From NCBI RefSeq assembly GCF_006345805.1, contig NC_043006.1, positions 71,672,001 through 71,736,000 of the forward strand: a stretch of 64,000 nucleotides of DNA, read 5' to 3'. This stretch comes from Octopus sinensis (taxonomy: Eukaryota). Of the stretch, positions 1,711 to 43,327 are shown piece after piece; the stretch's first letter is position 1, and each line of letters opens with the position of its first letter. Under the pieces are notes generated by a model, which had not been told where the DNA came from, searched no databases, and was given only the letters and a program-made list of their open reading frames with translations. The position numbers and the translations under genes were made by a program.

Positions 1711-2829
1711 CAATACTATATAGCAGGGTACTATTATTTGTAACAAGGATAAAATGATCGTTGCTAGGGCCATGGAGTGAGTGGCTCCCATGCCAGTGAC
1801 ACGTGAAAACACCATTCAAGCATGATCGTTGCCTTACCGGCACATGAAAACAACATTCAAGCGTGGTCGTTGCCAGTGCAGGTATCATGTAAAAACATTT
1901 CTTGAGCGTGGTCATTGCCAGAACCGCCTGACTGGCCCTCATGCCGGTGGTACGTAAAAAGCACCCACTACACTCTCGGAGTGGATGGCATTAGGAAGGG
2001 CATCCAGCTGTAGAAACTTTGCCAGATCAGATTGGCACCTGGTGCAGCCTCTGGCTCACCAGTCCTCAGTCAAACAACAATGAACGATATGGTGTCATTC
2101 ATTATCTGGGTAACCATACCGATATTTTACAGTAAGTACAGAACTGTTAATTACATGGGTACAAACAGTGATATTCCAATATAAAGTGTGATATTTAGTG
2201 TAGATATACACAGTAATATCCTACAATATATATATCATCATCATCATCATCATTTAACGTCCGTTTTCCGTGCTAGCACGGGTTGGACGGTTTTGACCGG
2301 GGTCTAGGGAGCCAGGGGCTGCCCCAGGCTCCAGTCTGGTCTGGCAGTGTTTCTACAGCTGGATGCCCTTCCTAACGCCAACCACTCCGCGAGTGTAGTG
2401 GGTGCTTTTTACGTGCCACCTGCACAGGTGCCAGAGGGGTCTGGCATCGGCCACGGTCAGTTGGTGCTTTTTATGTGCCACCTGCACAGAAGCCAGTCGG
2501 GGCGGTGCTGGCACCGGCCACGTTCGGATGGTGCTTTTTATGTGGGGGGAGGGTGCAGAAATATAGGGGAGCACCAGTGGGGAGGGTGTGTTCGAGAAAC
2601 GATGACAGGTTCTAGACAAGTAGAACGTAGGATATCACGAGAGGGGTAATGCATGGTGAAATAGCATATTGAAGAGGGGGGTTCGAAGAGTAGACCCTAT
2701 AATGGTGGTGGGAGAAGCGACATCCGGTATAGATGGAGCAAAATATAGAGATACCGGTATTGGTGGTGGGGGTGGGCAAGGGCGGGTGCACCGGAATATG
2801 CGAAGGTTGAACTTGACGGGCTATATATA

Positions 2830-2861
<32 letters not shown>

Positions 2862-5800
2862 CATACATACATACATATTGTATGATATTACTGTAGAGCT
2901 ATTCAGTGATATCCAATGTTATGCACAGCACCATGCATTGTCTATTTATGGAATCACTCAAAAAAAAAAAAAAAAAAAGAGAGAGAGAAAAACATCATGC
3001 TATAAGCTCTTTATATGTAAAGGCTGTCCCCAATGAGACTCACCAAACCTTAAATATCTACATATTCCAGTAGATTGCACACTGCAAACCCCCATCCTGT
3101 AACAATACAGAGGAAGCTACTTACAAGCACCCCACAGTAGACCATCACAGCTAACACTTCGCACACATTCTTCTAACTTGGACATGTCAGTCTCATCGTC
3201 CCATGGCTTTACATCCAAAATAAGGTTACTCTTGGCAATAATAGCAGGCTCTGAGTGAGAGAAAGAAAACATGAATTAGCAAAATACAGTGCAGATCAAA
3301 AACTGGAGGTCAGGACACACAACATATTGAAGTCACTAACATACATATACTATACAAAAAAAATCCCATAACTATTACTTTGTTATCAGGGTAACAAGTA
3401 GCAAGACTTTATAACAGCCTTCCATCCTCCAGGAAATTCATTTTGGTCAACTCATCCAAGTAAGAGACATAATTAAAGTGAAAATGGCAAGACTAAATAT
3501 TAAAACTGGACTTCACGATCAGCATAATATCTGCTCCTTCTACTCCACTTATTGACACAAAAACAATTTTCACATCCTTCCTTCATCTTGTCCATTCACC
3601 ACCCCCACCTATCCACCATGGTTTGGATCACTCAGAGTTCTTTGCTATATGGTACATATATATTCAACAACAGAAAATTCAGTCAAATGGCTTATGGAAT
3701 TGAATTGCATTTCTACCAACGTCTTTACAGCATGGACAGAGTTCCACATTTTATTAGGCTTCGGGCAATAAAGAAATTGTTTTGCAATGGAAGTAAAGAA
3801 TTTTTCCACAATGTATTGGTTCTTGTAAAGTTTTTAATCTCCTTAAATGGTTTGCAAAGTTCATGTCCTTTCTGTTACATTATTTTATCTTTTCCAACCA
3901 TAACTACTACACAAAAGAAAAATACATTTTAGTTGAACAGGTGCAAAATTAGCAGATAGTTTATGATATCCCTTTACAAAATAAAAGCATCTTTAATTTT
4001 TTACTTGTTTGTGACACTGGATTGCAGTCATGCTGGGGCACAGCTTTGAAGGGCTTGAGGCAAAGTAACCTCAGTACATATTTTTAAGCTTGGTACCCAT
4101 TCTTTCAGTCTCTTACGCTAAACTACTAAACAGGGACATAAACAAACCAACACCAATCGTTAAGCAGGGAGTGGGGGGTGAACGAACACAAAGACACACA
4201 TATACACACACAACATGCTTCTTTTAGTTTCCATCTACCAACTCCACTCACAAGGCTTTGGTTGTCCTAGGCTTATAGAAGACACACATTCAAGATGCCA
4301 CACACTGGAACTGAACCCAGAACATGATAGGGGAGCAAACTTCTTGCCACAGTCATGTCTGCCCCATATTTATTTTTAAAATGTAAAATATATATAAAGT
4401 ATATACAGGAGGCTTCTTTCTATCACATATTTCACATGTATGTGCACCATATCATTATCATACTTTTAGCATCTGCATTTCCATGCCTGCATAGGTCAGA
4501 TGGAATTTGCAGAGGCAGACACACACACACAGGTGTGGCTATGTGGTAAGAAGCTTGCTTCCCAACTACATGGCTTCAGGTTCAGTTCCACTACACAGAA
4601 CCTTGGGCAAGTGTCTTCTATCGGCCTGAGGCAACCAAAGCCTAGTGAGTGGATTTGGTAGTCAGAAATTAAATGAATTTTAGCGCTCACACACGTTTGC
4701 ATTAACAATCTAGTAGCCCAACTCAGTCAATGTTGTTGACTTAAAGCTACAGTTTTTTTCCTCCATGGTAACTGCCACAAACATATTTTAAGTAACCTAA
4801 ATTTGCTTATGCCTAAGCACTGCTTGGTGCTCATACTGCTGAGCACGTGCACGCACACACACAAACAGTGTCTTTCATGTTCAATATATGAAAGCATGTC
4901 TGGTCAGAGGAAATATTACCTTACTTCAAAACCCGTGTGAATTGGTAACAGGAAGGGCATTAGGTCATAGGAAATTTGCTTCCAAAAACCCCATCTGACC
5001 CATGCAAGCATGGAAAAATGCACATTAAAACGATGATGCATGTATAAACCAAAATTATGCAGATATTTTGAGATTTATTTTATAATCAAGAATTTGGCAT
5101 ATTTTTAATTAGTCATTAGGGAAACAGTTGTAAATCCTAAAATAATAGAGAATATCAAAATTAGGAAAACGAAACAATTAGAAGACTATAACCTGAGGAC
5201 AGCATCACGTTAATTTATGAGGCAGAAAAATAATCAACTCACTTTTGCTCTTCTTTAAATTATATTCTTCAATTCGCTTCTGGTGTTCCTTTTTCCTTTC
5301 CTCGTCCTCCTCATCATCATCAGAACCAAAGAGATCAATGTCATCATCATCATTATCACTGTCATCAGCTGGTTTAGACTTTGTAGCAGTTGTTCCAGTG
5401 CCATAGGAGTCTAGACTCTTCTTGACTCCAGGGAATCTGACAATGAATATCAAACATCCACAAATAACAACAGTATCTTTTGCCAGACATCACAATGGAA
5501 TGGTCAGCTCAACAGTATGGCATATCCAATCACTAAGGATCAACATTTCAATACCTATCAATGAGTTCAGTGATTTGGGACCTTCCCCACCACTACCACC
5601 ACTGCTATAATAAAGGTATTCAGGTGTAAAAATCAAACCAAATCAATACTTTGATCTAAATGATAAGGAAGTATTTCTAACAGTCACAGTAAACAATCTT
5701 TACAACACTGAAACCATTCTCAGAATTATATTTAAGAATACCTTTTTTCGATAGAATTTGAAGGATGTTGGTGGAAATTTTAACAGGCCAAAAGAGTGTC

Positions 5801-6409
5801 TGAATTCACTGCAAGTTTTACCATCTTGAGTCCACCTTGACCAGCTCTGCCATGGCTAAATCAACAGATGTATAGGAATAAAAATAACAGTAGAGAGAGT
5901 ACATGTCCAGACTGGCACACTGCACCTCATGTGGTTAATTATCTGGTGTACAAAAATAATTGCAACCAGTTCAAACTTTTAAACTACATCACTTCTGACC
6001 TTGGCACAGGATAAAGAGCAGTTTTTTTTAACCCCAGATAGGAAACATACCCTAAATAGTTACAACAGAGTGAACTCATCTCTGGTTTGTCTAAGAAGGC
6101 AGCAACTTTAAATAATAACAGACTCAGACTGTGACAATCCATCTAACCCATAACAGCTTGGAAAGTAGATGTAAAATCATGATGATGATGGAATTTGGTA
6201 AAACAAAATAAGAGACTGCAGATAATAAAATGATACTGGAAGGAGTATTAGACATCAGTAGGTCCAGTTTGCAACCGAGAAGTGTTATAGGCCTATCTCA
6301 AGGCTTAAAACATATTTATCATTTGTGATGGGAATACACTATTCAGGAACTGCTATGCCATCTTCTGAAATCTATGATTAGTTTCTTTTGTTTAAGATTG
6401 GTAATGTTT

Positions 6410-6440
<31 letters not shown>

Positions 6441-9067
6441 TACAGCCACTCATATATTAATTGATATTGATTATAATGTAATCTTGCAGCCTGTTGCATC
6501 ATGTGCCATGCCCGTTATGAAAGGAATGAAGGTGAAAACAAACTCTCCCGTTGCCAAAAAGGCTCGGTAAGTTTTTACTTGGATTTCTTAAAACTTATTC
6601 ACTACCATAACTGGTTAAGGCAGTTGAAACCTCTCACTTGCAATAACATCTCATCTTTTACAAGACACTCTGTCTTCTCAAACACAGAGACTCAGTTTTC
6701 AGTAATATGACTTAGTAACAACAACAATAATAATAATAAGAGCACTCAGAGAGCGCAAACCTTTGCCAAGGCAACACCAACATCCTCTCAATGATTAGCC
6801 TGAGATGATTTCTAAATTGAGAATATCTGAAATAAACTAGTCTGCTCTCACAAACAAGAACATTAAAAAATAAACCTGACCACTCTCAAAAATTAAGTTA
6901 AAAAAAATGGAAAAATAATCCAGAATCCTTGTCCGGTACCTGATCGATCCCAATGGTAATCATGGAATGTAAAGGTGGCTGTAGTTTATTCTTATCGAAT
7001 ACAAGCCAAAGTTAGAAAATTCACCATGCAAAATAGTTACAGCCTAAAGGGAGATAATTGAGAAAGACTTGACAGTTAACATAAGATTGTAATCATGTAA
7101 AGTAAATATAACAAATAATCCAGAATCCTTGTCCAGTACTGAATTGATCCAAAAATCTAATCAGTTTGTACCATCCATGAGGCCAAACATCCCTGAAAGT
7201 TTCATCTGAATCCATTCAGTGGTTCTTGAGATATCTTGTCCAGGGACGAACAAGTACAACTGAAAACAATACCTCTGCTTTTCTAAGGCAGAGGTAATAA
7301 TCCTTTCTACTATAGGCACAAAGGCCAAAACTTTAGGAGAGGGGGCCCAGTTGATTACTTTGACCCTATGCCCCCAGTGCTCAACTAGTTCTTATTTTAT
7401 TGATCCTAAAAAGATGAAAAGCAAGGTCAAGCTTGGCGGAACTCAGAACATAAAGTGGAAGAAATGCTGCTAAGCATTTTATCTGAAACACAAACAATTC
7501 TGTCAATAATAACATTTTTTTTTTTTTTTTTGATTCAGAACAAAAAAACAAGGAAAATAGGTCTTACTTTGCAACTTGTGTCTTGAAAGATTTAATGTGC
7601 TCAAACCAGCGTTTGGCATGACAGTAATTTGCAGAGGGCGAAGTAGTAAGTCCACCAAAGACAACACTGTCGGCTTGAGATGGTTCATAGCTGGAACATA
7701 CCAAAACAGAAAGAAAAAAAAAAAAAAGGATTTACAATGAATTCAAAAGCATCACCCATCCATTTTCTCCCTCTATTCCTGGGTTACAGTCTTCAGGTAT
7801 CTCCTCTATAGGGGTCCTATCAGAACTATCACTATGCTTCCCTAGTCAAGATTATCTGTGTATTCAGTAGATTATCTGTTCAGTTCTATACTTAAGAGAT
7901 GAGACATTTATATTTGACGGATATTTATAAGCCCTAAAATTCACTCCATAACTGCCCACGGGCATATGTTGTAGTGGTTAAGAGCATGGGCTACTAACCC
8001 TACGATTCTGGGTTTGATTCCAGGCAGTGACCTGAAGAATAATAATAAATAATAATATCGAAAAATACCTTAGGAATGAGAACCCAGGTTCGAAATTTCC
8101 CCAAGACACCTGATGAAGGCTGGAGGGTATTATCAGCCGAAACGTTGTGTTAACAATAAGATGAGGACAAACATTCATCAAATGTAAATAATTTATATTA
8201 TCTGTTACCCAAGGTAATTTAATCTACATTCCAATCAATGTAAACGATGATGATGTACTGAATAGTACACACAAAAATTTCTCAATGTTTCATGTCCACT
8301 TTCCATTTTAGCAGGGACTGAATAGATTGCTATAAATTCTTTTGTTTCAGTTACTGGACTGCAACAATCATACTGGGGCATTTAAGAGTTTACCAAATTA
8401 AATTGACAAGTACCTCTGTTAAATCAGGTACTTATTCTATTAGTTTCTTTTTGCCAAACTGCTAAGTTATACGGATGCACACAAACCAACAGCTATTGTC
8501 AAGTGGCTGAAGTGCAACAACGACACACAAAAACACACTTCTCAAGTTTCCGTCCAGCAATTTCCCTCACAAGGCATTGGTTGGCCTGAGGCAATAGAAG
8601 GCATGGCCATGATGCAATGAAATGAGATATAACTGAAGACTTCGTGGTAACAAAGTGAATTCCATATACACAGTCACATACACACGCACTTTTGCATGAA
8701 TATGTAATGCTGGATAAACTTGTGTTCTGATTGATACAAGAATGTAGTAATATTTCAACTGTACATGTAACATGCAAAAACCACAATATTCAATGTTTAA
8801 AAAAATATTCTAAATGTATGAAGAAAACTGAAAAAGCAACAAATATTTGCACCATTCAGGCAACAAACCTCCAACAGAGGATTGTTTTGGGTAGTCATTG
8901 CTGGTGTGGGTTTTACAAGGTCAGAGTGCAAATACTACCACAATAATAATGATAAAAATATAATTAAAAATAAAAAACAAATGTTTGAGAAGGAACGAAG
9001 GAGACAACCATTCGCTTCAGGCTGCTTCTCAGAAGTTCTCAAGTTAATTTAGGAAGTTGATGGGTTG

Positions 9068-12000: not shown

Positions 12001-13118
12001 AGCGCGGGACCATTCTTCGTTTTCATCGACCAAATTCATTCAGAAATATAAACGACACTTGCCCAAGAGGTCGGGGGCCGGGGGTGGCAAACGATATCGA
12101 CTGGACGGTCACATATAGATATACATTCGCATTTCCTTTTCTAGTAGCCTATTGAAACACAAGTAAAATTTTACATGAATCTTATGTTACATATGTATTT
12201 AGATTTAATAAGAACTACCGGGCATATTAATTTCTTTTATACTTTTTTTTTATGGTCTAAATATTTCATGATCTTTACTTTTCGACAGTATTTTATTCCT
12301 ATATTTTTATTTAATAAAAGCTCTCAGTAACTAACAATCGTACCGATCGAGCTTGACAGAAAGATATATAATGTGTATTCATAATATGTTCGCTTAAGTT
12401 ATACTAAGGACATAAAATGCATTCACATATGTTTTAGAACGTTTTGTGTATGCATGCAACATGGCCAAATGGGTTTAAAGCACAGATGGGCAACTTTTTC
12501 GGAGAAGCAGGCCGCAAGAGACAATCAGAAAAATCAGAAAAAAAGAAAGAAGTTCAAGCTAATTTTACAATTCGGCGTACCATTCAGAAAGTCCCGCAGA
12601 TTGTACATGACTGCTTTGGGAGATCATTTGACATAATTACAGATTTGTGCCTCCCCCTCCCACTCCGGCTTTGTTACCTGAAAAATACATTCTTTTACAA
12701 TGAAATTTGGTGAAGATAGGTTTCCGAGGGTGTAGGTGACGATTATGTTGATAACATTAAGAAAAATTGATGCGAAGTGAGAATGAATTTCGGATCATTT
12801 TTTCTCACCTCCCGACTTCATTTCTTTGTAACTCTTCAAAATGCATATTTTTTAAATATTTTGGTGAAATATATTTTCGCGAGTTAAATTACGTAATGTT
12901 TCAAACATAAATTTTAAAAAACATTAAAGTTAAGGAAATTAGTGATAACAAAGTTGAGGATGGGGATAAACGGCATTTAAATGTCGGTATGAACACGTGG
13001 ACACATAACGAGAGAGGAATATGGTAATAATGTCATACCCTTCGACGTAGCTGCGAGTAGACATATACTCGTTTAAAGCTTTCAAACCAGCATCTGTTTT
13101 CAGGTCTCCAAAACCCAT
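1471..13118 (-). CDS. EEF1B2: Elongation factor 1-beta, multi-exon, 3'-partial: join of 13118-13039, 7690-7568, 5436-5243, 3250-3125, 1538-1471; last exon not found in the window
   Basis: Spliced translation (197 codons): [34 protein letters not shown]...RWFEHIKS...[15 protein letters not shown]...[23 protein letters not shown]...[20 protein letters not shown]. All introns GT-AG with consistent phases. The MGFGDLK N-terminus identifies the beta rather than the delta subunit. Confidence 0.97.
1760..2075 (+). mobile_element. RTE-LINE 3'-tail / SINE-like copy
   Basis: GGAAGGGCATCCAGCTGTAGAAAC core shared with the LINE tail at 25686-26050. Confidence 0.75.
2236..2540 (-). mobile_element. RTE-LINE 3'-tail / SINE-like copy
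   Basis: (CAT)n-TTTAACGTCC...GGATGCCCTTCCTAACGCCAACC on plus. Confidence 0.8.
3125..3250 (-). CDS. EEF1B2: EF1-beta coding exon 4 (126 nt)
   Basis: [42 protein letters not shown]; ctcag acceptor, GTAAGT donor. Confidence 0.96.
4001..4364 (-). mobile_element. tRNA-derived octopus-type SINE (degenerate)
   Basis: Homology to the full copy at 18399-18804. Confidence 0.65.
5243..5436 (-). CDS. EEF1B2: EF1-beta coding exon 3 (194 nt, acidic region)
   Basis: [12 protein letters not shown]...[36 protein letters not shown]; tgtcag acceptor, GTGAGT donor. Confidence 0.96.
6490..6566 (+). pseudogene. NDUFS1: Duplicated NDUFS1 exon (orphan copy, I->V change) within a 643-bp duplicate at 6085-6727
   Basis: Near-identical to 32258-32334 with both splice sites retained; flanks match 31855-32495. 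Confidence 0.92.
6738..7300. mobile_element. Non-autonomous Helitron/Helentron-like element
   Basis: Terminal hairpin ACCTCTGC-N9-GCAGAGGT (7271-7295); internal direct repeat AATAATCCAGAATCCTTGTCC; no TSD seen. Confidence 0.5.
7568..7690 (-). CDS. EEF1B2: EF1-beta coding exon 2 (123 nt)
   Basis: ttccag acceptor; [40 protein letters not shown]; GTAAGA donor. Confidence 0.96.
7960..8192 (+). mobile_element. tRNA-derived SINE-like element with a minimal hammerhead ribozyme core
   Basis: A-box TGTTGTAGTGG, anticodon-like arm GGG-CTACTAA-CCC, B-box GGTTTGATTCC, (AAT)n linker, then the hammerhead motif at 8105-8151. Confidence 0.7.
8105..8151 (+). ncRNA. Minimal type I hammerhead ribozyme (Penelope-type)
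   Basis: GACAC-CUGAUGA-A-GGCUG..CAGCC-GAAA-CG-UU-GUGUU; stem I GACAC/GUGUU; palindromic ACGU helix III. Confidence 0.65.
8979..9140 (-). ncRNA. H/ACA snoRNA-like gene, copy 1 (diverged)
   Basis: Same basal stem, H box AAAUUA, UUGAGA/UCUCAA stem and ACAUUU; 29-nt poly(U) expansion disrupts the 5' pocket; different 3' pocket. Confidence 0.58.
9612..9737 (-). ncRNA. H/ACA snoRNA-like gene, copy 2 (probably degenerate)
   Basis: Paralog of 11263-11397; 5' pocket UCCAA/AUUUCA and ACAUUU retained, but H box AAAUUG and ~10-nt deletion in the 3' upper stem. Confidence 0.55.
10694..10890 (+). mobile_element. Non-LTR retrotransposon (RTE/L2-like) 3' end
   Basis: [42 protein letters not shown] followed by a TGA-repeat tail. 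Confidence 0.7.
11263..11397 (-). ncRNA. H/ACA snoRNA-like gene, copy 3 (apparently intact)
   Basis: 135 nt, sense to host intron; GGAAGU/ACUUCC stem, H box AAAUCA (11334-11329), second hairpin, ACA+UUU end; 5' pocket UCCGA / AUUUCA fits 18S UGAAAU-U-C-UUGGA. Confidence 0.72.
13039..13118 (-). CDS. EEF1B2: EF1-beta coding exon 1 (80 nt)
   Basis: ATG at 13118, [27 protein letters not shown], donor GG|GTATGA. Confidence 0.96.
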
Positions 13119-15312: not shown

Positions 15313-15700
15313 ACTCTTTTACTTGTTTCAGTCATTTGATTGCGACCATGCTGGAGCACCACCTTTAGTCGAGCAAATCGCCCCCAGGACTTATTCTTTC
15401 TAAGCCTAGTACTTAGTCTATCGGTCTCTTTTGCTGAACCGCTAAGTTATGGGGATGTAAACACACCAGCATCGGTTGTCAAGCAATGTTGGGGGGACAA
15501 ACATAGACACACACACACACATATATATACATATATATGATGGGCTTCTTTCAGTTTCCGTCTACCAAATCCACTCACAAGGCTTTAGTTGGCCTGAGGC
15601 TATAGTAGAAGACACTTGCCCAAGGTGCCAGGTAGTGGGACTGAACCTGGAACCATGTGGTTGGTAAGCAAGCTACTTACCACACAGCCACACCTGTACC
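15313..15700 (-). mobile_element. tRNA-derived SINE, near full length
   Basis: Reverse complement of the 18399-18804 family. Confidence 0.85.
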
Positions 15701-16823
15701 TACACATTCTCAAATTATAAAGTTAATATCTAAATACAACCAACAACAACCAAACTGTGTGACAGTGCTGTGACTAACAACATTACAACATTCTTTTGTG
15801 AAATCCTTTGACTTGAACATGACACACCTAAGCACACACAAAGCTATACATGCATGAATAAATTCTAACCATTAGCACTTACCCAAATTTAACCAATAAA
15901 AATTCTCCATACAATGTAACATACAGCATGATTATCATAATTATCATTCAACAGAATTCAAGTTACACTAGAAAATTTGAAATTAACAGAGACTATATAA
16001 TGCCAAGATGAACTTAAATGATTTCTAGTCTGATGATGGCTTATCTGGCTGAAACTTCAAAATCACTGTCAGTACTATGCTTATCAAAGAATAGTAAAGA
16101 TATACACTACCAAATATATTGACTAATCCCTCAACTTATTGGAAAATTGTTTTTATTATAATATAAAAACAAAAGATAATACACACACACACACATATAT
16201 AGACAGTCACATATATACACACACACATACACAAGCACATGTATATGTATATAGTTGAAATTTACAGAAAAACAAAAAACAAAGACAGATGTACAAATAA
16301 CAAGCAGGTGTATTAGTTTAATGCGAAAGTCTTTTATGTTTTGAGCCTATGCTCTTCAACAGAAAGGAATAAGAGAAAATAAACAGAGAGAGAAAAACTT
16401 GTGGATTTAGCGATCAAGCAGGGTGATGTACATACACATCATTAAACATATTTATGTATGTATGTTTGTATGTGTTTTATATATATATATATACTAGCAG
16501 AGATACCCAACCTTGCTCTGGATTAAAATGGCATAGTTTTTTATTGTTTCACTTGTTTCAGTCAGGTGACTGTAGCCATGCTGGAGCATTGCCATTGGTC
16601 GAACAAATTGACCACAGGATTTATTCTTTGCATGCCTAGTACCTATTCTATTAGTGTTTTTTTGCCAAGCAGCTAAGTTATGGGAACTTAAACACAGCAA
16701 CATCGGTTGTCAAACAATGTTGGGGCTACAAACACAGACACACAAATATACACATATACATGACAATCTTCTTTCAGTTTCCATGTATGAAATCCACTCA
16801 CAAGGCTTTGGTTGGCTTGAGGC

Positions 16824-17392: not shown

Positions 17393-19041
17393 AAAAACAG
17401 AACAATGAGAACAAAACAGTAAAAACAAACGGTGAGGGTTGTTAAGCCAAAATGATTAGAAAATTATTCTGAACGTTTAGGAAGACAAGCTTATGAAGGA
17501 GACAGTATAAGCACATTTAGTCTTTACGAAGGTTGTGGATAGAAAGGTAGATTCTCTTTCGTCACGTGTCAGTGATGAGAGAGTCAAGGAGGAGGAGTGA
17601 AAGAGAGGGAATGGTGAAGAGAAGAGGAGAAGAATAGGGAAGGGTGGGAGAGAAAACCAGAAAGGATGAAGGACAAGAGGGGGAGAGAGATAGAAGAGTG
17701 CACATCGTAATTATTAAGATAAAACTTACTTAGAAAAGGATGCGTGGCGTTTGATCATATAATATAAATATATGCATATATACATACATCTATGTACATA
17801 CCTACATATATATGAGATAATAACAATTCATAGTAAATAATTCTGAAAAAAGTTTTTGTGTGTTCTCAGAGAATATTACCCTCAGTGGCGCTAGTGTTGG
17901 TATATCCATAAATAAGTCACTAACCAAAATAAGTGGATCTATCATTTAGGAAAATAGTATTTATTGTTTAAGTGTTGTACTGGATAAATTGCAAAAATAA
18001 CTCAAAAACAGAACAATGAGAACAAAACAGTAAAAACAAACGGTGAGGGTTGTTAAGCCAAAATGATTAGAAAATTATTCTGAACGTTTAGGAAGACAAG
18101 CTTATGAAGGAGACAGTATAAGCACATTTAGTCTTTACGAAGGTTGTGGATAGAAAGGTAGATTCTCTTTCGTCACGTGTCAGTGATGAGAGAGTCGAGG
18201 AGGAGGAGTGAAAGAGAGGGAATGGTGAAGAGAAGAGGAGAAGAATAGGGAAGGGTGGGAGAGAAAACCAGAAAGGATGAAGGACAAGAGGGGGAGAGAG
18301 ATAGACAGAGAAGAGATAGAAGAGTGCACATCGTAATTATTAAGATAAAACTTACTTAGAAAAGGATGCGTGGCGTTTGATCATATAATATAAATATAGG
18401 CGCAGGAGTGGCTGTGTGGTAAGTAGCTTGCTAACCAACCTCATGGTTCCGGGTTCAGTCCCACTGCGTGGCATCTTGGGCAAGTGTCTTCTGCTATAGC
18501 CCCGGGCCGACCAATGCCTTGTGAGTGGATTTGGTAGACGGAAACTGAAAGAAGCCTGTCGTATATATATATATATATATATGTGCGTGTTTGTATGTCT
18601 GTGTTTGTGCCCCTAGCATTGCTTGACAACCGATGCTGGTGTGTTTACGTCCCTGTCACTTAGCGGTTCGGCAAAAGAGACCGATAGAATAAGTACTGGG
18701 CTTACAAAGAATAAGTACCGGGGTCGATTTGCTCGACTAAAGGCGGTGCTCCAGCATGGCCGCAGTCAAATGACTGAAACAAGTAAAAGAGTAAAGAGTA
18801 AGAGATATGCATATATACATACATCTATGTACATACCTACATATATATGAGATAATAACAATTCATAGTAAATAATTCTGAAAAAAGTTTTTGTGTGTTC
18901 TCAGAGAATATTACCCTCAGTGGCGCTAGTGTTGGTATATCCATAAATAAGTCACTAACCAAAATAAGTGGATCTATCATTTAGGAAAATAGTATTTATT
19001 GTTTAAGTGTTGTACTGGATAAATTGCAAAAATAACTCAAA
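17393..19041. repeat. 611-bp direct tandem duplication, second copy interrupted by a SINE
   Basis: 17393-18003 matches 18004-19041 once the insert is removed, apart from one substitution and a 14-bp indel seen. Confidence 0.92.
18399..18804 (+). mobile_element. Full-length young tRNA-derived SINE (406 bp)
   Basis: A/B boxes, internal (TA)n, (GAGTAAA) tail, ATA duplication; empty site present in the first tandem copy. Confidence 0.9.
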
Positions 19042-23000: not shown

Positions 23001-25685
23001 ACTGAGTTTTATTTGTGTGTGTGTAAAATTAATCCATAAATAATTTATATATGTATGCATGTATAAAACATCTACGTCCCGGTATAATGAGTTGGTGATA
23101 ATTTTCAAGAGGCTTACAGATATATCGTCATAATCCCTAGTTATATTTTCCAATATTTTCATTAAAGCTTCTCGTCTATCTATGACCAAAACTCAGACAT
23201 TCTATTCCACTCACTGATACTAATTATAGTAAATCTGAATCCATATATTAAATGTCACTAATCTAAAAAATAAAACAAATTAGTTTTCGGTGTTGAAAAC
23301 TTTCAAAAAAGGATTTTAAACTTGTATTTTATTTCCAAAAGTTATTTATAATCCATTTAGAACGTATTGCTAAAAGAATAAGAAATTCCTTTTATAATCA
23401 TTTACGGATAATTTTGTAAAGTGTTTCCTTCTCCCACTTCATTATCATTAATAATACAAAAATATAATCCCATAATTTTGAAGAAACTATCCATCACCTT
23501 TGACATAGTGATATTACAGAGCTAGTGAAAACTATTACAGCGTAGCTTTAAATTATTTATGGGTTAATTTTCTTCGTGGAATATCTCAAAGTGTTTAATA
23601 TCATATATTATTATTTATAAATTCATCTTCAAGAAAAGTGAAAGCCATGAATAATATTTTTGCCAAATGAAAAATATATAAATAATAATAATAATTCTTC
23701 GAAACTAACGATTTACCTTCATTGCTATCGAGTCTAAGGACGAAGTGATCGGTATGTATTTATGATAACTCAATTTTGTTGCTAATAGTCCCCGCCTAAA
23801 TAACCATCTAGGCTCCTTGCAGTCTTTTACAAGCTAACCAAATCATTAAAAGTTTAATTTATGCCTGAAAAATATTAGAGTAAACATTAGACTATGTAAT
23901 TGAAGAAGCAACAGAGAAGCGTGTCTGTGAAAAATTTTCAAGGTGTCCTTAACAGTCTTATACATTGTCCCGATGTTATTTATCAATATTTCCAACTTAA
24001 CTCTCATGATAACAATATCTTAGCTTGATAAAATAATAAAATTGTTATTTGATTCAGATCTGACTGCCATTTCTTGCTATTTGGGGATGGTGCAAAAAGT
24101 CGTTCATTGCATAACGTTGTGGCGGTATGCTGCATTGACTTTCAATGCTGCCTCCAAGGTGGAATAAAATAAACACTAGTAACATTTTCAAGTCAGTTAC
24201 ACTCATTACCCGTGCATCACGTAGAAAATGTGAAAAAATGTTGTTAATATCTACTACCAAACAAACTCGCTCACTTATTTATGTCGTAAAATGCTATGAT
24301 CGTCATAAATATCTGATTATCAACAAAGCAGTATGCATCGGATAGTTAAGCCATCAAATAAGTCTTTTAATCAACACAACAGTTTTAGGTCCCATATTTT
24401 TGAAACCATTGAATGTTTTCTCTTTTTAAAATTTAACATGTACTGAAAGTCAACCATAAATGTCAGTTTATCATTCAATATGATTTGATAAAAAAAAATA
24501 TCTTATTGTGTAACACCCTTTCCCTGTTCATCCTACTCACACTACCCGACACATCTTCGCATGTAAAAGAAGTAGAAACTGAATATTAATACATAAGTTT
24601 ATATATATATATATTAAACAAATATACGTATCCCAGATCCATAGAATTGTTTTTTATAAATACATGTGCTCCTATTTTAATTACTATTCTAAATAGCTTT
24701 TTATAAATTTAATTTTTAAAAATAGTTGTTTACTCTATGCTGTGATACAAAATGTAGTTTCAAAGGTACGAGCCTCAGTGTTCACTAAAGCGATATTTCT
24801 TGCTTTTTATAGGTAATATATCATCGCACAGGAGATATTGCATATTATTTTAGCTAGCCTATTCGAGTAGGAATTTATATAACAATTATGTACACTTACA
24901 CACAGATATTACGTACACACTTTGATATTTCCCAAAATGACCTTCCGACTAAATGATAGGCAACTGCTCACCAAAAGAGCTCTCTTTCCAGCATTATAGG
25001 CCACTGGGCAAAGCTATATACACTAGGGCCTAGAGTATTTATTTATTGGGAGCAAACCACAACATACACGGATTAACATTAAGGCTCCTAAAACCGCTGG
25101 GTCCCCAAACAACTACCCTATGTGCCCATATCTAAAGACGACACTGTTCACCAACACTCTTCGACCGCTGGCCCACAAACACAATATCTCTTTATATCTT
25201 TCTTTTCGTCACTGGTGTCAGGCTGTATCGGCCTTTAACTTTCTCTTGGATAACATCGGTGTCGTGCAGAGGGGAGGCTGGTATGCATGCGCAACTGCTG
25301 GTCTTCCATAAACAACCTTGCCCAGACTTGTTCCTCAGTGGGGTAACTTTCTTGGTGCTATCCCACGGTCATTATATATATATAATATGAGTGAGAGATG
25401 TAAAGAATTATGTGTAGTCACATTATCAATTTAGCAGTTATTAATATATATATATATATATATCTCAATGACAAGAGAACAGGAGTTTTGTAACCAGCCT
25501 CATTAGTATGCAGCTGTTTTTGCTCTAAGAAGCCGTGTACTCAGAGCTGTATGGTTATGCAACATCTTATAGCTGCCTTGATGCAATTAAATTAAACTGT
25601 ATCTTTAGTTTGGAAGGCAATTAAATACATACAGTTGGTTACTTTCAGAACCATATATATATATATATATCTATATATATATATA

Positions 25686-27827: not shown

Positions 27828-27882
27828 ATGTTACGTCTAGCGTCTCTGAAGCTTCTTCAGAGACCAACTAGCATAGCTTGTG
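27828..27882 (+). CDS. NDUFS1: NDUFS1 first coding exon (transit peptide; exon starts 27820, so an upstream non-coding exon is implied)
   Basis: ttacaccag|ccatcaagATG; [18 protein letters not shown]; G|GTAAGT. Confidence 0.9.
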
Positions 27883-30800: not shown

Positions 30801-33800
30801 GCGGCTGGAGTTGAAATTCCAAGATTTTGTTACCATGATCGTTTATCGGTGGCAGGAAACTGTCGGATGTGTTTAGTTGAAGTGGAGCGAGCAGCAAAGG
30901 TGAATCTCATATTTCTATCCCTCTTTCAGTTGTGGTCTTAATTGAATGCAAGAGAGTTAGTCTGTGTTCGCTGTCCAGATAATGGAAACAGACACTAGCC
31001 CTGTATCCAAAATGGCCAATTTTTTTTTACATTCTGCACAGCGACTAAACTCTCTTGCATTTTATTATTATTGTTGTTAATGCAGAACCTCATTAGTTGC
31101 TTGGATTATGGATTTTATTATTAGTATTAATTATTTTAAATCAGTTTGATGTTAGCTCAACACAGTATTGTAATGATAAAGCCATCATTTCATTAATCCA
31201 GGGAACACTATTCTCAGAATAATCAGTTCTACTTGTATGACAAGTCCCTCAAGATGTATGTAGACACCTTACTCATAAAATCTACCTAGCTGTAAATTAG
31301 ACCATGAACTGAGGCAGTCCACCTGACTGTAAGTAGATACCACACTGTGGTACAGTCTACCCAGCTGTGTCTACCACACAGTGACAGTCCACTTAGCTGT
31401 CAGTAGGTACAACACATTGACACAATCCACCTAACTGTCAGTTGGTATTACAATGTGGTACATTCCACTTGGCCGTTAGTAGGTACCTATCACTCTGTTT
31501 CTGTTATTTTACTCTCTCCTCTCATTCTTATACTATTTGTCTCTGTCAAGACAATCTGTTGGTGTTGGTGAATGAATAAATGGAGATGACATTCAGCAAG
31601 GGAGAACTCTTTACTTTTGCTGAGGGTAAGGTAACCTCTCTGGTGCTGGTGCTGTGCTAAAACCAGACTCTGTAAAGTGGTTGTCAAGTGAATAGAGACA
31701 GTGTTGGGTAGGGAGACTTATTTAGTCTTGCTGGGGATATGACAAACACTTTAGTGCTGGTGCCATGGTAAAATGCATCCTGTCCATTCTGTAAAGTAGT
31801 TGGTGATAGCAAACCATTCCAAAAATGGAATGTATGAATGAAACTTGGTCCCCAGTTTGTCTAAGAAGGCAGCAACTTTAAATAAGAACAGACTCAGACT
31901 GTGACAATCCATCCAACCCATAACAGTTTGGAAAGTAGATGTAAAATCATGATGATGATGGAATTTGGTAAAACAAAATAAGAGACTGCAGATAATAAAA
32001 TGATACTGGAAGGAGTATTAGACATCAGTAGGTCCAGTTTGCAACCGAGAAGTGTTATAGGCCTATCTCAAGGCTTAAAACATATTTATCATTTGTGATG
32101 GGAATACACTATTCAGGAACTGCTATGCCATCTTCTGAAATCTATGGTTAGTTTCTTTTGTTTAAGATTGGTAATGTTTTCTCTCTCTCTCACACACACA
32201 CACACACATACAGCCATTCATATATTAATTGATATTGATTATAATGTAATCTTGCAGCCTGTTGCATCATGTGCCATGCCCGTTATGAAAGGAATGAAGG
32301 TGAAAACAAACTCTCCCATTGCCAAAAAGGCTCGGTAAGTTTTTACTTGGATTTCTTAAAACTTATTCACTACCATAACTGGTTAAGGCAGTTGAAACCT
32401 CTCACTTGCAATAACATCTCATCTTTTACAAGACACTCTGTCTTCTCAAACACAGAGACTCAGTTTTCAGTAATATGACTTAGTAACAACAACAACAACA
32501 ATAATTATCATAGTAGTAATAATTGTGTCTACTTTAGGTATAAGGCCAGCAGTTTTTAGTAGGAGAGGGTTCGTTTCATCAGCCCTCTACATATTTGGTA
32601 CTTTATCATTGACCCTGGAGGGATGAACAACAAAATTGACCTCAGTAAGATTTGAATTTAAAATGTAAAGAGCTGGAACAAATACTGTAAGCCATTTTGT
32701 CCAATGCTCCTACAATTCTGTGAATACATCACCCTAAGTAATCCTTTTTAATTTTGGCACAAGGCCAGCAATTTTGAGGGGAGAGGGAACTCCATTACAT
32801 CAACTCCAGTACTCAACTGGTGTGTATTTTATTGAATATGAAAAAAGCAAAGTTGACCGTGATGGAATTTGAACTCAGAACATTATAAAGAAAGACACAC
32901 TGGAAAATATAGTTGTAAATAGACACATCCTTCCAGAGTCGATATAAAAATGGGGAGGAAGTTAATTGATTCCATCAGTATCTGTCAGGTACTGATGTTG
33001 ATGATATTGACTAAACCCTCCCCACAAAATTGCTGGTCTTGGGCCAAAATTAGAAGCAATTATTGTTAAGAGTGATGGAATACTGGAATAAATATTTTTT
33101 TATACACATGTCCCTATAAATATACACACACACACACAAGCACGTGCGTGTGGCTCTGTGGTAAGAAGTTTTTGTATTCAGTCTCACTGTATGGCATCTT
33201 GGACAAATGTTTTCTACTATAGCCCAAGGGGCTGACCAAAGCATCATGAGTAGATTTGGTAGACAGAAATTGAAAGAAGCCTATAGTGTGTGTGTGTGAG
33301 ACTGTCTGTTTGCTTTGACATATGATAGTTGTAAGTGATTGTCACTATCATGCAAGTGGCATCCTTTGTTTCCAGTCCTCTGATACATGTCTGCACATGA
33401 GGAAATATTACCTTACTTGGAAACAGAAAGGGCATCCAGCTGTAGAAAACCTGCCTCAACAAATCCTATCTGGCCCATACAAGCATGGAAAAGCTGACAT
33501 TAAAACAATGACAATGAAGATCAGTCACACAGCTCAGCCCTTATTTAACTACATCTAGGTAAAGTTAAATGGAAACAGTGTAGTGTTGTATCTTACTCTT
33601 AATAGTAAACGATTCGCTAATTGTTAAAGGGGTTGCTTAATTCAATAAGTTTTGCTTTGTTCTTTTTTAAAGGGAAGGTGTGATGGAATTCCTTCTGGTC
33701 AATCATCCATTGGACTGTCCAATTTGTGACCAAGGTGGAGAATGTGATTTGCAGGTAGAGTATTTACTTATTATCACTCATTCTTTCTTTTGTCTGATTG

Positions 33801-42800: not shown

Positions 42801-43173
42801 CCTTTTGGAAGTGTCTTCAGCTCTGGTGTTGAGTGCGGTTTTTATCTTTGGCCTTTTGTTCTTTGGTTTCTTCGATGCAGCATCAATGAATGCCAGCAGG
42901 TGAATGACTATCCTGTCAAATTTCCCTTTGAACACTTGCCAGTAGGCTCCAGAACATTATTACTCATAAGAGATAACAATATTAGTGGCCACAAGCTTAA
43001 AACTGTATAGACTGTATAGAAGAATTACATATAACAAAGGCACTAAAAACACCAGCTTTGCTAAATATAGGAGTCAAAAACACTCTGAAGCCAGTGTTAA
43101 TTCTTGTGGCTTCAGAATGTTTTTGACTCCTATTTTTAGCAAAGCTGGTGCTTCTTAGTACCCTTGTTATATA

Positions 43174-43213
<40 letters not shown>

Positions 43214-43215
43214 TG

Positions 43216-43246
<31 letters not shown>

Positions 43247-43266
43247 ATATAATATATATATATATA

Positions 43267-43327
<61 letters not shown>

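What the first reader, a model, noticed from the sequence alone, without database searches (positions are those of the whole stretch)
6085..6727. An NDUFS1 exon with both flanks is copied, antisense, into EEF1B intron 2
6085-6727 matches 31855-32495 with only 6 substitutions and one CA-unit difference. It includes the 77-nt exon carrying the fourth N1b Cys, both splice sites intact and one I->V change. It lies upstream of the NDUFS1 promoter, so it cannot be cis-spliced into NDUFS1. Every EEF1B pre-mRNA would however carry ~640 nt complementary to the NDUFS1 pre-mRNA made from the same promoter. Inference: a possible intermolecular dsRNA/ADAR or splicing interaction, or a recent exon-capture event. 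A misplaced haplotig is the alternative.
Basis: partly seen in the sequence, partly recalled or inferred. Interest (0 to 1): 0.7.

Follow-up and report, generated by a model that had tools for sequence, protein, structure and literature searches.

The report
Real NDUFS1 exon copy inside EEF1B
A 0.65-kb piece of the octopus NDUFS1 gene (one exon plus parts of both flanking introns) really was duplicated into an intron of the neighbouring EEF1B gene a few million years ago; it is shared by two sister octopus species, looks like a neutral by-product of DNA repair, and is not an assembly error.

Summary
Window 6085-6727 matches 31855-32495 with 6 substitutions and one CA unit, and the match extends to 6737/32505. 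The window is Octopus sinensis chromosome CM016868.1. EEF1B runs on the minus strand and NDUFS1 on the plus strand. The copy lies in EEF1B intron 2, antisense to EEF1B, and carries NDUFS1 coding exon 4 (77 nt) with both splice sites intact.

The haplotig alternative is refuted. An independent de novo assembly of the sister species O. vulgaris has the same copy, the same two junctions and all six diagnostic substitutions. O. bimaculoides has an empty site. Polarised with the O. bimaculoides source, 4 changes arose in the copy and 2 in the source. The rough age is 5-8 My.

The copy evolves like neutral intron, and both changes in its exon alter the amino acid. No transposon hallmarks were found and the junctions are blunt. 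The best reading is capture of nearby DNA during double-strand-break repair.

The "same promoter" claim is unproven: the two ATGs lie 14.7 kb apart and the NDUFS1 TSS is unknown. The trans-dsRNA/ADAR idea is geometrically valid but untested, with a low prior. This is a real but ordinary small dispersed duplication.

The parts
6085..6737 (+). Segment B: the duplicated NDUFS1 fragment (copy). It comprises 405 nt of intron 3, exon 4 and 171 nt of intron 4. It lies in EEF1B intron 2, antisense to EEF1B.
   Evidence: 653 columns, 98.5% identical to 31855-32505. Present with identical junctions in O. vulgaris L002 16640-17287. Absent in O. bimaculoides.
6490..6566 (+). Copy of NDUFS1 coding exon 4 (77 nt) with intact AG| and |GT splice sites. 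Carries Ile>Val (A>G at 6550).
   Evidence: The O. vulgaris copy adds a second non-synonymous change at 6562 (Ala>Thr).
31855..32505 (+). Source segment in NDUFS1 (end of intron 3, exon 4, start of intron 4). This is the ancestral locus.
   Evidence: Collinear with O. bimaculoides L006 14829-16396 across both source breakpoints, 89.6% over 1621 columns.
32258..32334 (+). NDUFS1 coding exon 4 (source exon), encoding [26 protein letters not shown]. Skipping it would frameshift into a stop.
   Evidence: The exon model reproduces P0241 exactly. The exon is 77/77 identical between O. sinensis and O. bimaculoides.
5693..6084 (.). Segment A: 392 bp directly left of the copy. Present in O. sinensis and O. 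vulgaris, absent in O. bimaculoides. Origin unknown and non-coding.
   Evidence: No match elsewhere in the window or in any fetched locus.
6738..6955 (.). Segment C: 218 bp directly right of the copy. Present in O. sinensis and O. vulgaris, absent in O. bimaculoides. Its last ~43-63 nt are an old local duplicate of 7091-7153.
5437..7567 (-). EEF1B intron 2 (2131 nt), the host of the insertion. It is about 817 bp in O. bimaculoides.
7568..7690 (-). EEF1B coding exon 2.
   Evidence: exact match to P0121.
5243..5436 (-). EEF1B coding exon 3.
13039..13118 (-). EEF1B coding exon 1 (ATG at 13118), with a pyrimidine-rich leader just upstream. It lies in the CpG-undepleted zone 11.8-13.6 kb.
27828..27882 (+). 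NDUFS1 first coding exon (ATG at 27828), preceded by a polypyrimidine tract plus CAG. An upstream non-coding exon is therefore likely and the TSS is unmapped.

Best explanation
This is a genuine, evolutionarily young interspersed duplication. In the common ancestor of Octopus sinensis and O. vulgaris, after the split from O. bimaculoides, a 0.65-kb stretch of genomic DNA from NDUFS1 was copied. It comprised the end of intron 3, the 77-nt coding exon 4 and the start of intron 4. The copy was pasted 25.8 kb away into intron 2 of the divergently oriented neighbour EEF1B, in the same chromosomal orientation as the source and hence antisense to EEF1B.

The most likely mechanism (inferred, not shown) is repair of a double-strand break in the EEF1B intron. 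Either a nearby cis template was copied by synthesis-dependent or template-switching repair, or a DNA fragment was captured by end joining. Either route gives blunt junctions, with one end in a microsatellite.

Since then the copy has drifted as neutral intronic DNA. Its pseudo-exon is not under protein-level constraint and is not positioned to be spliced into either gene. The pair of direct repeats brackets the 5' halves of two essential genes, so it is a potential substrate for unequal recombination.
For: Shown:
1. The repeat is real and highly significant.
2. The window is O. sinensis GCA_006345805.1 (100% identical to L001).
3. The O. vulgaris assembly GCA_951406725.2 aligns collinearly across window 9501-4552 at 99%, straight through both junctions. 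It is ONT+10x+Omni-C, de novo, and used O. sinensis only for chromosome-scale dot-plots.
4. All 6 copy-vs-source differences seen in O. sinensis are also in the O. vulgaris copy. Polarised with O. bimaculoides, 4 are copy-derived and 2 are source-derived.
5. O. bimaculoides has an empty site with no Ns...CACAGGAA|CAGA|GTAATCATGG....
6. The source locus is collinear with O. bimaculoides across both source breakpoints, so the source is ancestral and was retained. This is copy-and-paste.
7. Copy-source divergence is 0.99%, against 0.66% between the two species' copies and 3.8% between O. sinensis and O. bimaculoides. That gives an age of roughly 5-8 My (CI 2-14) on a local clock calibrated with the 2.5-My split.
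8. Neutrality. Osin-Ovul divergence in the copy is 0.77%, against 0.5-1.0% in the flanking intron. The copied exon has 2 non-synonymous and 0 synonymous changes, whereas the real exon is 77/77 conserved out to O. bimaculoides.
9. No terminal inverted repeats, no convincing target-site duplication and no poly(A). Microhomology at the left junction is 0-1 bp.
10. Introns are retained, and only 1 of 4 copy-derived changes is A>G. There is thus no sign of a spliced or hyper-edited RNA intermediate.
Against: - The repair mechanism is inferred from the absence of other hallmarks, not from a positive signature.
- The right junction lies in an A-rich (AAC)n(AAT)n tract, which could also fit internal priming by a reverse transcriptase.
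- The copy sits inside a 1263-bp block (5693-6955) that O. bimaculoides lacks entirely. Segments A and C on either side have unknown origin. The event may therefore have been a larger composite insertion, possibly carried by an element I cannot recognise. Alternatively, O. bimaculoides may have deleted ancestral intron. No usable outgroup was available, because Argonauta introns do not align.
- I could not search the whole octopus genome for further copies of A, B or C.
- Neutrality rests on very few substitutions.
- No read-level or RNA data were available.
Confidence: 0.72

Rival explanations
1. Assembly artefact: a misplaced alternative haplotype (haplotig) of the NDUFS1 exon-4 region was stitched into the EEF1B intron.
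For: Copy-source divergence (about 1%) is in the range of octopus heterozygosity (1.22% in O. vulgaris). The O. sinensis assembly has elevated duplicated BUSCOs (5.2%).
Against: - There are no Ns at either junction.
- An independent assembly, from a different species, individual and sequencing technology, has the same insert, the same junctions and all six diagnostic differences, plus its own private changes.
- O. bimaculoides shows a clean empty site.
Confidence: 0.01
2. RNA-mediated origin: an unspliced NDUFS1 pre-mRNA fragment was reverse-transcribed by a LINE enzyme, primed internally at the A-rich (AAC)n(AAT)n tract and 5'-truncated at 31855. The cDNA was inserted or captured at a break in the EEF1B intron.
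For: - The 3' end of the copy (in NDUFS1 sense) coincides with an A-rich microsatellite, and the 5' end is abrupt.
- A LINE-like ORF fragment exists nearby at 26206-26568. This is weak evidence, since it has no Pfam hit.
- The one exon change is A>G (Ile>Val), the type that ADAR editing would leave.
Against: - There is no target-site duplication at 6084/6738, and no added poly(A). The A-rich tract is inherited from the source, and O. bimaculoides has it too.
- Only 1 of 4 copy-derived changes is A>G.
- Retained introns give no positive evidence for an RNA step.
Confidence: 0.12
3. Transposon-mediated capture: the whole 1263-bp block A-B-C (5693-6955) is a non-autonomous element, or a transduced or transduplicated cargo, that picked up the NDUFS1 fragment and inserted as a unit.
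For: - O. bimaculoides lacks the entire 1263 bp, not just B.
- A and C have no recognisable origin in 64 kb of surrounding sequence.
- 'GTAA' occurs at both outer edges, a possible 4-bp duplication.
Against: - There are no terminal inverted repeats, no Helitron-like termini and no coding capacity.
- No second copy of A or C exists in about 190 kb of octopus sequence examined.
- The distal end of C is an old local duplicate of intron sequence 200 bp away. This fits A and C being ancestral intron that O. bimaculoides deleted.
Confidence: 0.1
4. Functional trans-antisense element (compatible with any origin): the abundant EEF1B pre-mRNA pairs through its intron 2 with nascent NDUFS1 pre-mRNA. This would trigger ADAR hyper-editing, mask the exon-4 splice sites or generate small RNAs, so coupling the two genes.
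For: - Complementarity is about 640 nt at 99%, with perfect runs of 219, 177 and 100 nt.
- The two genes are neighbours and divergently transcribed.
- Coleoid cephalopods edit RNA exceptionally heavily (established knowledge).
- Intermolecular sense-antisense editing is reported as common in some metazoan lineages (PMC9989829).
- Molluscan precedent exists for pseudogene-derived antisense regulation (Lymnaea antiNOS, PMC3537157).
- The insertion has been retained for more than 2.5 My in two species.
Against: - There is no sequence constraint. The copy diverges at the intronic rate and the O. vulgaris copy has 5 private changes plus a 3-bp deletion.
- A systematic search found no editing attributable to antisense pairing in human data (PMC13445718).
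- Introns are short-lived, and retention for a few My is what a neutral insertion would show anyway.
- There is no expression or editing data.
Confidence: 0.07

Closest known systems
Small interspersed (dispersed) segmental duplications and templated insertions produced by double-strand-break repair: ectopic SDSA, MMBIR/FoSTeS template switching, or end-joining capture of DNA fragments such as numts (PMC8421209, PMC2567098)
   Same: - Copy-and-paste with the donor left intact.
- The insertion is absent at the orthologous site of an outgroup.
- No transposon hallmarks, and blunt or minimal-microhomology junctions.
- The donor lies close by in cis (25.8 kb).
   Different: - At 653 bp the insert is far longer than typical polymerase-theta templated insertions (tens of bp).
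- No diagnostic microhomology was found.
- The surrounding 610 bp (segments A and C) may or may not belong to the same event.
Gene-fragment (duplicated, unprocessed) pseudogenes lying antisense in a host gene and acting as trans natural antisense transcripts, for example the Lymnaea antiNOS pseudogene RNAs (PMC3537157) and pseudogene-derived trans-NATs in general (PMC2984423)
   Same: A fragment of a protein-coding gene, transcribed in antisense as part of another transcript, with long near-perfect complementarity to the parent RNA. The best-known precedent is also a mollusc.
   Different: - Here the antisense exists only as intronic RNA of a host pre-mRNA.
- It is mostly complementary to introns of the parent (77 of about 650 nt are exonic).
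- No expression, duplex formation or regulatory effect has been shown.
Processed retrocopies and LINE-mediated 3' transduction
   Same: A dispersed partial gene copy with an abrupt 5' end and an A-rich 3' end.
   Different: Introns are retained, no poly(A) was added, there is no target-site duplication, and no adjacent LINE is seen at the source.
Uncollapsed haplotigs or false duplications in heterozygous invertebrate assemblies
   Same: About 1% divergence between the copies, similar to the allelic divergence of the species.
   Different: The copy is present with identical junctions and diagnostic substitutions in an independent assembly of a sister species, and no gaps flank it.

Membership tests
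Real germline interspersed duplication (versus assembly artefact) | Both junctions are reproduced in an independent assembly or individual. | tested here: met
   O. vulgaris L002 13869-18818 is collinear with window 9501-4552 at 99%, and the junction sequences are identical. The independence of the assemblies was checked in PMC10700109.
Real germline interspersed duplication (versus assembly artefact) | Copy-source differences are inherited substitutions, not allelic noise. | tested here: met
   All 6 differences are shared by the O. vulgaris copy: 4 copy-derived and 2 source-derived, polarised against the O. bimaculoides outgroup.
Real germline interspersed duplication (versus assembly artefact) | Normal (diploid) read depth at both copies, with reads spanning the junctions. 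| not testable with these tools
DSB-repair templated insertion / DNA capture | An empty orthologous site in an outgroup, with the donor locus retained. | tested here: met
   Empty site in O. bimaculoides. The source is collinear with O. bimaculoides across both breakpoints.
DSB-repair templated insertion / DNA capture | Absence of TE hallmarks (TIR, TSD, poly(A), Helitron ends). | tested here: met
   Only a 4-bp 'GTAA' occurs at the outer A/C edges, and nothing at the edges of B.
DSB-repair templated insertion / DNA capture | Junction microhomology or other template-switch signatures. | tested here: inconclusive
   The left junction has 0-1 bp. The right junction is ambiguous within the (AAC)n(AAT)n tract. 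An old 43-63-nt local duplicate lies at the distal end of C.
LINE-mediated retrocopy | Loss of introns. | tested here: not met
   The copy contains 405 nt of intron 3 and 171 nt of intron 4.
LINE-mediated retrocopy | An added poly(A) tail and flanking target-site duplication. | tested here: not met
   The A-rich end is inherited from the source, and O. bimaculoides has it as well. No TSD is present.
Transposon-captured gene fragment (Pack-MULE / Helitron-type) | Terminal repeats or characteristic termini, and TSDs, around the cargo. | tested here: not met
   The repeat finder on 5400-7300 shows no terminal inverted repeats at either the B edges or the A-B-C edges.
Transposon-captured gene fragment (Pack-MULE / Helitron-type) | Multiple genomic copies of the carrier sequence. 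| not testable with these tools
   Only about 190 kb of octopus DNA could be searched, with no extra copies of A or C.
Trans natural antisense regulator / ADAR substrate | Long complementarity between two co-expressed RNAs. | tested here: met
   Complementarity was shown: about 640 nt at 99%, with a longest perfect run of 219 nt. Co-expression is inferred from both being housekeeping genes and was not measured.
Trans natural antisense regulator / ADAR substrate | Duplex formation in vivo with a measurable effect (editing clusters, exon skipping, siRNAs). | not testable with these tools
   No RNA-seq is available here.
Trans natural antisense regulator / ADAR substrate | Evolutionary constraint on the complementary segment. 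| tested here: not met
   The copy diverges at 0.77% between species, against 0.5-1.0% for the flanking intron. O. vulgaris has 5 private changes plus a 3-bp deletion. Numbers are small.
Bidirectional-promoter gene pair (NDUFS1/EEF1B) | TSSs of the two genes within about 1 kb on opposite strands. | tested here: inconclusive
   The head-to-head orientation is confirmed, but the ATGs are 14.7 kb apart (10.4 kb in O. bimaculoides). The NDUFS1 ATG exon is preceded by an acceptor-like sequence. CpG-undepleted zones lie at 11.8-13.6 kb and weakly at 23-24.4 kb. The TSS is unmapped.

The most novel reading that the evidence does not exclude
In O. sinensis and O. vulgaris, but not O. bimaculoides, the intron 2 RNA of the very highly expressed EEF1B gene may act in trans as a 640-nt antisense to nascent NDUFS1 pre-mRNA made 25 kb away on the same chromatin. 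The resulting intermolecular dsRNA would be hyper-edited by the unusually active cephalopod ADARs, or diced, or would mask the exon-4 splice sites. That would be a lineage-specific, naturally controlled case of trans-duplex editing or regulation linking a translation factor to a complex I core subunit.
Probability: 0.07. Interest if true: 0.6.

Novelty: new member of a known kind. Interest (0 to 1): 0.25.

Why it matters
Taken at face value, this is one more small, neutral gene-fragment duplication, and such events are common in animal genomes. Three modest points of value remain.

1. **Assembly quality.** A roughly 1%-diverged duplicate in a heterozygous invertebrate assembly, which looks like a haplotig, is here shown to be real by cross-species comparison. 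This is useful as a quality-control example.

2. **A natural experiment.** It is cleanly dated and polarised. Two species carry a 640-nt trans-complementary segment between two housekeeping pre-mRNAs, and a close relative lacks it. The clade has extreme ADAR activity, and whether intermolecular duplexes are edited at all is currently disputed (PMC9989829 versus PMC13445718). Existing octopus RNA-seq could answer this at almost no cost.

3. **A recombination hazard.** The direct repeats bracket EEF1B exons 1-2 and NDUFS1 exons 1-3. Unequal recombination between them would delete the 5' ends of two essential genes.

Tried and rejected
1. **First homolog search.** A 281-aa NDUFS1 fragment returned only proteins under 500 aa. 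The top hit, P0001, was an unrelated chimeric bacterial model. This search did not help identify the species.

2. **Argonauta hians as an outgroup for segments A and C.** Its EEF1B intron 2 (about 1160 bp) shows no alignable intronic similarity even at word size 7, so the polarity of A and C stays unresolved.

3. **The O. vulgaris NDUFS1 source copy.** That species' model is an odd 1400-aa protein that the length-limited searches did not return. The 50%-representative library also lacked it, with a best hit of 58%. A true four-way copy/source-by-species comparison was therefore not possible. I used three ingroup sequences plus the O. bimaculoides source instead.

4. **Metagenome scan.** A scan for the 28-nt left-junction sequence, looking for a third individual, gave 0 hits.

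5. **Rfam on the whole window.** The aim was to find snoRNAs or other RNAs in the EEF1B introns. There were 0 hits at gathering thresholds.

6. **Pfam on the frames of segment A.** Direct counting shows A and C are closed in all six frames. The LINE-like ORF at 26206-26568 has no Pfam hit.

7. **TIR/TSD search.** Only chance-level 12-nt inverted matches between A and C were found, plus a 4-bp GTAA at the outer edges.

8. **A shared 10-mer.** ATGGAATGTA occurs in the source's left flank (31826-31835) and in the target's right outer flank (6961-6970). I considered it as a possible template-switch microhomology. I rejected it because the geometry does not connect those points to the observed junctions.

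9. **Gene conversion between copy and source.** I looked for signs of it. The six differences are spread along the whole length and are retained in both species, so there is no evidence for conversion. The asymmetry of 0 private substitutions in the O. sinensis copy against 5 in the O. vulgaris copy is not significant.
Full report

Yes. A BLAST comparison of the two regions gives a single direct (+/+) alignment, window 6085-6737 against 31855-32505. It has 653 columns at 98.5% identity and is by far the strongest self-match in the window. Within 6085-6727 there are six substitutions (6116, 6144, 6157, 6377, 6449, 6550) and one CA-unit difference (6421-6422). The left boundary is abrupt. The right boundary decays over 6727-6737 inside an (AAC)n(AAT)n microsatellite. 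The window's only assembly gap is at 43408-43507, far from both copies.

**2. What are the genes and the organism?**

A protein search with the assembled EEF1B exons found a 100% identical protein named Octopus vulgaris/Octopus (P0121). It also found orthologues from O. bimaculoides (P0122) and Argonauta hians (P0123). Fetching the encoding loci showed that the window is O. sinensis GCA_006345805.1, chromosome CM016868.1 (L001, 100% identity over 23,118 bp).

Exon models were fixed by requiring GT-AG boundaries and exact reproduction of the annotated proteins.
- **EEF1B coding exons (minus strand):** 13118-13039, 7690-7568, 5436-5243, 3250-3125 and 1538-1471. The last exon lies beyond the window start.
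- **NDUFS1 coding exons 1-6:** 27828-27882, 29376-29470, 30792-30899, 32258-32334, 33673-33754 and 36110-36174.

The copy therefore lies in EEF1B intron 2 (7567-5437), antisense to EEF1B. It comprises about 405 nt of NDUFS1 intron 3, the 77-nt coding exon 4 (copy 6490-6566) and 171 nt of intron 4. Both splice sites are letter-for-letter identical to the source. The one exonic difference is A>G at 6550 (Ile>Val). The exon encodes PVASCAMP..., which holds the last Cys of the C-x10-C-x2-C-x13-C motif of the N-terminal 2Fe-2S domain. The motif was read from the sequence, the Pfam Fer2_4 assignment comes, and the N1b cluster assignment is from established knowledge.

**3. Artefact or real?**

The O. 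vulgaris reference GCA_951406725.2 is a different species and a different individual. It is a de novo ONT+10x+Omni-C assembly, and O. sinensis was used only for chromosome-scale dot-plots. It aligns collinearly to window 9501-4552 at 99% identity, straight across both junctions. The junction sequences are identical.

In a four-sequence alignment (O. sinensis copy, O. vulgaris copy, O. sinensis source, O. bimaculoides source), all six copy-versus-source differences are shared by the O. vulgaris copy. With O. bimaculoides as outgroup:
- **Copy-derived (4):** 6116 G>T, 6144 C>T, 6377 G>A, 6550 A>G.
- **Source-derived (2):** 31927 and 32217, both C>T.

The O. vulgaris copy adds 4-5 private substitutions and a 3-bp deletion. 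The O. sinensis copy adds only one CA unit. These are inherited substitutions, not allelic noise.

O. bimaculoides has an intron 2 of only about 817 bp, with no Ns and a clean empty site. Its NDUFS1 source region is collinear with O. sinensis across both source breakpoints. The source is therefore ancestral and the event was copy-and-paste.

**4. How old is it, and how does it evolve?**

Excluding the microsatellite, the divergences are as follows.

| Comparison | Differences | Divergence |
|---|---|---|
| Copy vs source (O. sinensis) | 6/607 | 0.99% |
| O. sinensis copy vs O. vulgaris copy | 4/604 | 0.66% |
| O. sinensis source vs O. bimaculoides source | 23/605 | 3.8% |

A local neutral clock was taken from the rest of intron 2 (8 substitutions in 1511 bp between the two species) together with the 2.5-My split quoted in PMC10700109. 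This dates the insertion to roughly 5-8 My, with a Poisson range of about 2-14 My. That is before the sinensis/vulgaris split and well after the split from O. bimaculoides.

Between the two species the copy diverges at 0.77%, no slower than the flanking intron (0.5-1.0%). The copied exon has two changes, both non-synonymous (Ile>Val shared; Ala>Thr in O. vulgaris). The real exon is 77/77 identical out to O. bimaculoides. On very small numbers, the copy behaves as neutral DNA.

**5. What does the insertion site look like?**

Relative to O. bimaculoides, O. sinensis and O. vulgaris carry 1263 extra bp (5693-6955) where O. bimaculoides has 4 bp. The NDUFS1 fragment (B) is the middle third. It is flanked by segment A (392 bp) and segment C (218 bp).

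A and C are closed in all reading frames. Neither matches anything else in the window or in about 190 kb of fetched octopus sequence, with one exception. The last 43-63 nt of C are an old (75-88%) duplicate of intron sequence 200 bp to the right, and this motif occurs only at those two places. That old local duplicate mildly favours A and C being ancestral intron that O. bimaculoides deleted. In that case the event is just the 653-bp insertion. A single composite insertion cannot be excluded, because Argonauta introns are unalignable.

There are no terminal inverted repeats, no Helitron-like ends, no added poly(A) and no target-site duplication at the edges of B. Only a 4-bp GTAA occurs at the outer edges of A-B-C. 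The left B junction has 0-1 bp of microhomology. The right junction is inside the microsatellite.

**6. What is the most likely mechanism?**

This part is inference. A double-strand break in EEF1B intron 2 was repaired by copying or capturing DNA from a nearby cis template 25.8 kb away. The route could have been ectopic synthesis-dependent repair, template switching or end-joining capture. This belongs to the same family of events as templated insertions and numt capture (PMC8421209, PMC2567098).

An RNA route would involve reverse transcription of unspliced pre-mRNA primed at the A-rich tract. It is less likely for three reasons:
- The A-rich tract is inherited from the source.
- There is no target-site duplication.
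- Only one of the four copy-derived changes is A>G.

**7. What are the consequences?**

The following are shown by geometry or sequence:
- Every EEF1B pre-mRNA contains about 640 nt complementary to NDUFS1 pre-mRNA, with perfect runs of 219, 177 and 100 nt.
- On the EEF1B sense strand the insert contributes no strong donor site and only one acceptor-like site, so there is no obvious cryptic exon.
- Skipping the genuine NDUFS1 exon 4 would frameshift into a stop.
- The copy lies 21.7 kb upstream of the NDUFS1 ATG, inside the EEF1B gene body, so it is not placed to be cis-spliced into NDUFS1.

Whether the two RNAs pair in vivo is unknown. The literature is divided. Intermolecular sense-antisense editing is reported as common in some metazoan lineages (PMC9989829). 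A 2026 systematic search found no editing attributable to antisense pairing in human data (PMC13445718). A molluscan precedent exists for a pseudogene-derived antisense regulator (Lymnaea antiNOS, PMC3537157). Given neutral evolution of the copy, I put the functional reading at about 7%.

Separately, 653 bp of 98.5% identical direct repeat now brackets EEF1B exons 1-2 and NDUFS1 exons 1-3. Unequal recombination between the repeats would remove the 5' ends of two essential genes. This is inference.

**8. Do the two genes share a promoter?**

The pair is head-to-head, as I recall it being in human (from memory; a literature search found nothing specific). However, the ATGs are 14.7 kb apart here and 10.4 kb apart in O. 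bimaculoides.

The NDUFS1 ATG exon is immediately preceded by a polypyrimidine tract plus CAG, so an upstream non-coding exon is likely. CpG-undepleted DNA is strong at 11.8-13.6 kb, around the EEF1B start, and weak at 23-24.4 kb. A shared bidirectional promoter with a long first NDUFS1 intron is possible, but so is a separate promoter about 10 kb away. This needs TSS data.

**9. Verdict**

The haplotig alternative is refuted. The event is a real, dated, lineage-specific small interspersed duplication of a gene fragment, which makes it a new member of a well-known kind, and it is most probably neutral. Its one distinctive asset is the natural carrier/non-carrier contrast among closely related octopus species, which could test trans-duplex RNA editing. 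Interest is 0.25.

Noticed in passing
window 43168-43507 (NDUFS1 intron/exon region): A (TA)n array at 43168-43407 abuts the 100-N assembly gap at 43408-43507. The O. sinensis NDUFS1 model (P0241, 706 aa) has about 34 residues of junk ([34 protein letters not shown]). O. bimaculoides and Argonauta have a conserved stretch of about 51 aa there (AVSDDEIGAVVGGMADAESLIVLKDFLNRLGSEALCTEESFPMNGAG). At least one exon is lost in the gap and the public model is wrong at that point.
   Followed up: partly
window 13118 vs 27828; L003/L006; L004: EEF1B and NDUFS1 are head-to-head neighbours in O. sinensis, O. vulgaris and O. bimaculoides, as I recall them being in human (from memory). In the Argonauta hians assembly the two genes sit on different contigs, and the gene upstream of EEF1B is an ankyrin-repeat gene. 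This may be ancient microsynteny that was broken in Argonauta.
   Followed up: partly
L002 1-3429 (about window 20.5 kb onward, + strand): The O. vulgaris annotation has a 1400-aa gene model on the NDUFS1 strand, starting about 7 kb upstream of the NDUFS1 ATG. It is probably an over-extended or fused model. It could not be retrieved.
   Followed up: partly
window 17393-19041: Near-identical local duplicates are present: 17770-18006 = 18805-19041 at 100% (237 bp), and 17393-17772 vs 18004-18398 at 96%. The O. vulgaris alignment is rearranged and shorter here. This is either a recent local duplication, a structural polymorphism or an assembly expansion in the intergenic region.
   Followed up: no
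window 2204-2544, 25655-25983, 29673-29880, 39499-39815, 54509-54829, 56675-56987, 59702-59865; second family 15313-15702, 18398-18798, 35654-36046, 45480-45765, 58073-58608, 58908-59139: At least two SINE-like interspersed repeat families (about 300-400 bp, 78-91% identity) are present, with many copies in both orientations in NDUFS1 introns and the intergenic region. A 56-nt fragment of the first family lies inside the duplicated segment (6135-6190 / 31905-31960).
   Followed up: no
window 50515-50793; 54685-55970; 56643-56823: Tandem arrays occur in NDUFS1 introns: a 26-bp unit x10.7, a 62-bp unit x5.3 embedded in a larger block of 91-94% identical repeats (54866-55970), and a 65-bp unit x2.8.
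   Followed up: no
window 6085-6737 vs L002 16640-17287: There is an asymmetry since speciation. The O. vulgaris copy has 4-5 private substitutions plus a 3-bp deletion, whereas the O. sinensis copy has none, only one extra CA unit. This is not statistically significant (about 1/16). It could reflect polymorphism, polishing differences or partial conversion.
   Followed up: partly
window 5820-5860, minus strand (segment A): On the EEF1B sense strand, segment A contains an exon-like stretch: tttag|CCATGGCAGAGCTGGTCAAGGTGGACTCAAGATG|gtaaaa (34 nt). If spliced in, it would frameshift EEF1B. Its donor scored below my 8/9 threshold, and there is no evidence that it is used.
   Followed up: no
window 26206-26568, minus strand: A 120-aa ORF (...RLRWYGHV...) resembles, from memory, the C-terminal tail of LINE reverse-transcriptase ORFs. 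It has no Pfam hit, so the call is weak.
   Followed up: partly
L001 28554-28922 / L002 27055-28379 / L003 24947-25315 / L004 19582-19950 (outside the window, about 5.5 kb beyond its start): A histone-fold gene (122 aa; 82 aa in the O. vulgaris model) lies just downstream of EEF1B, convergent with it, in all four octopod assemblies. This neighbour is conserved even in Argonauta, where NDUFS1 is not adjacent.
   Followed up: no
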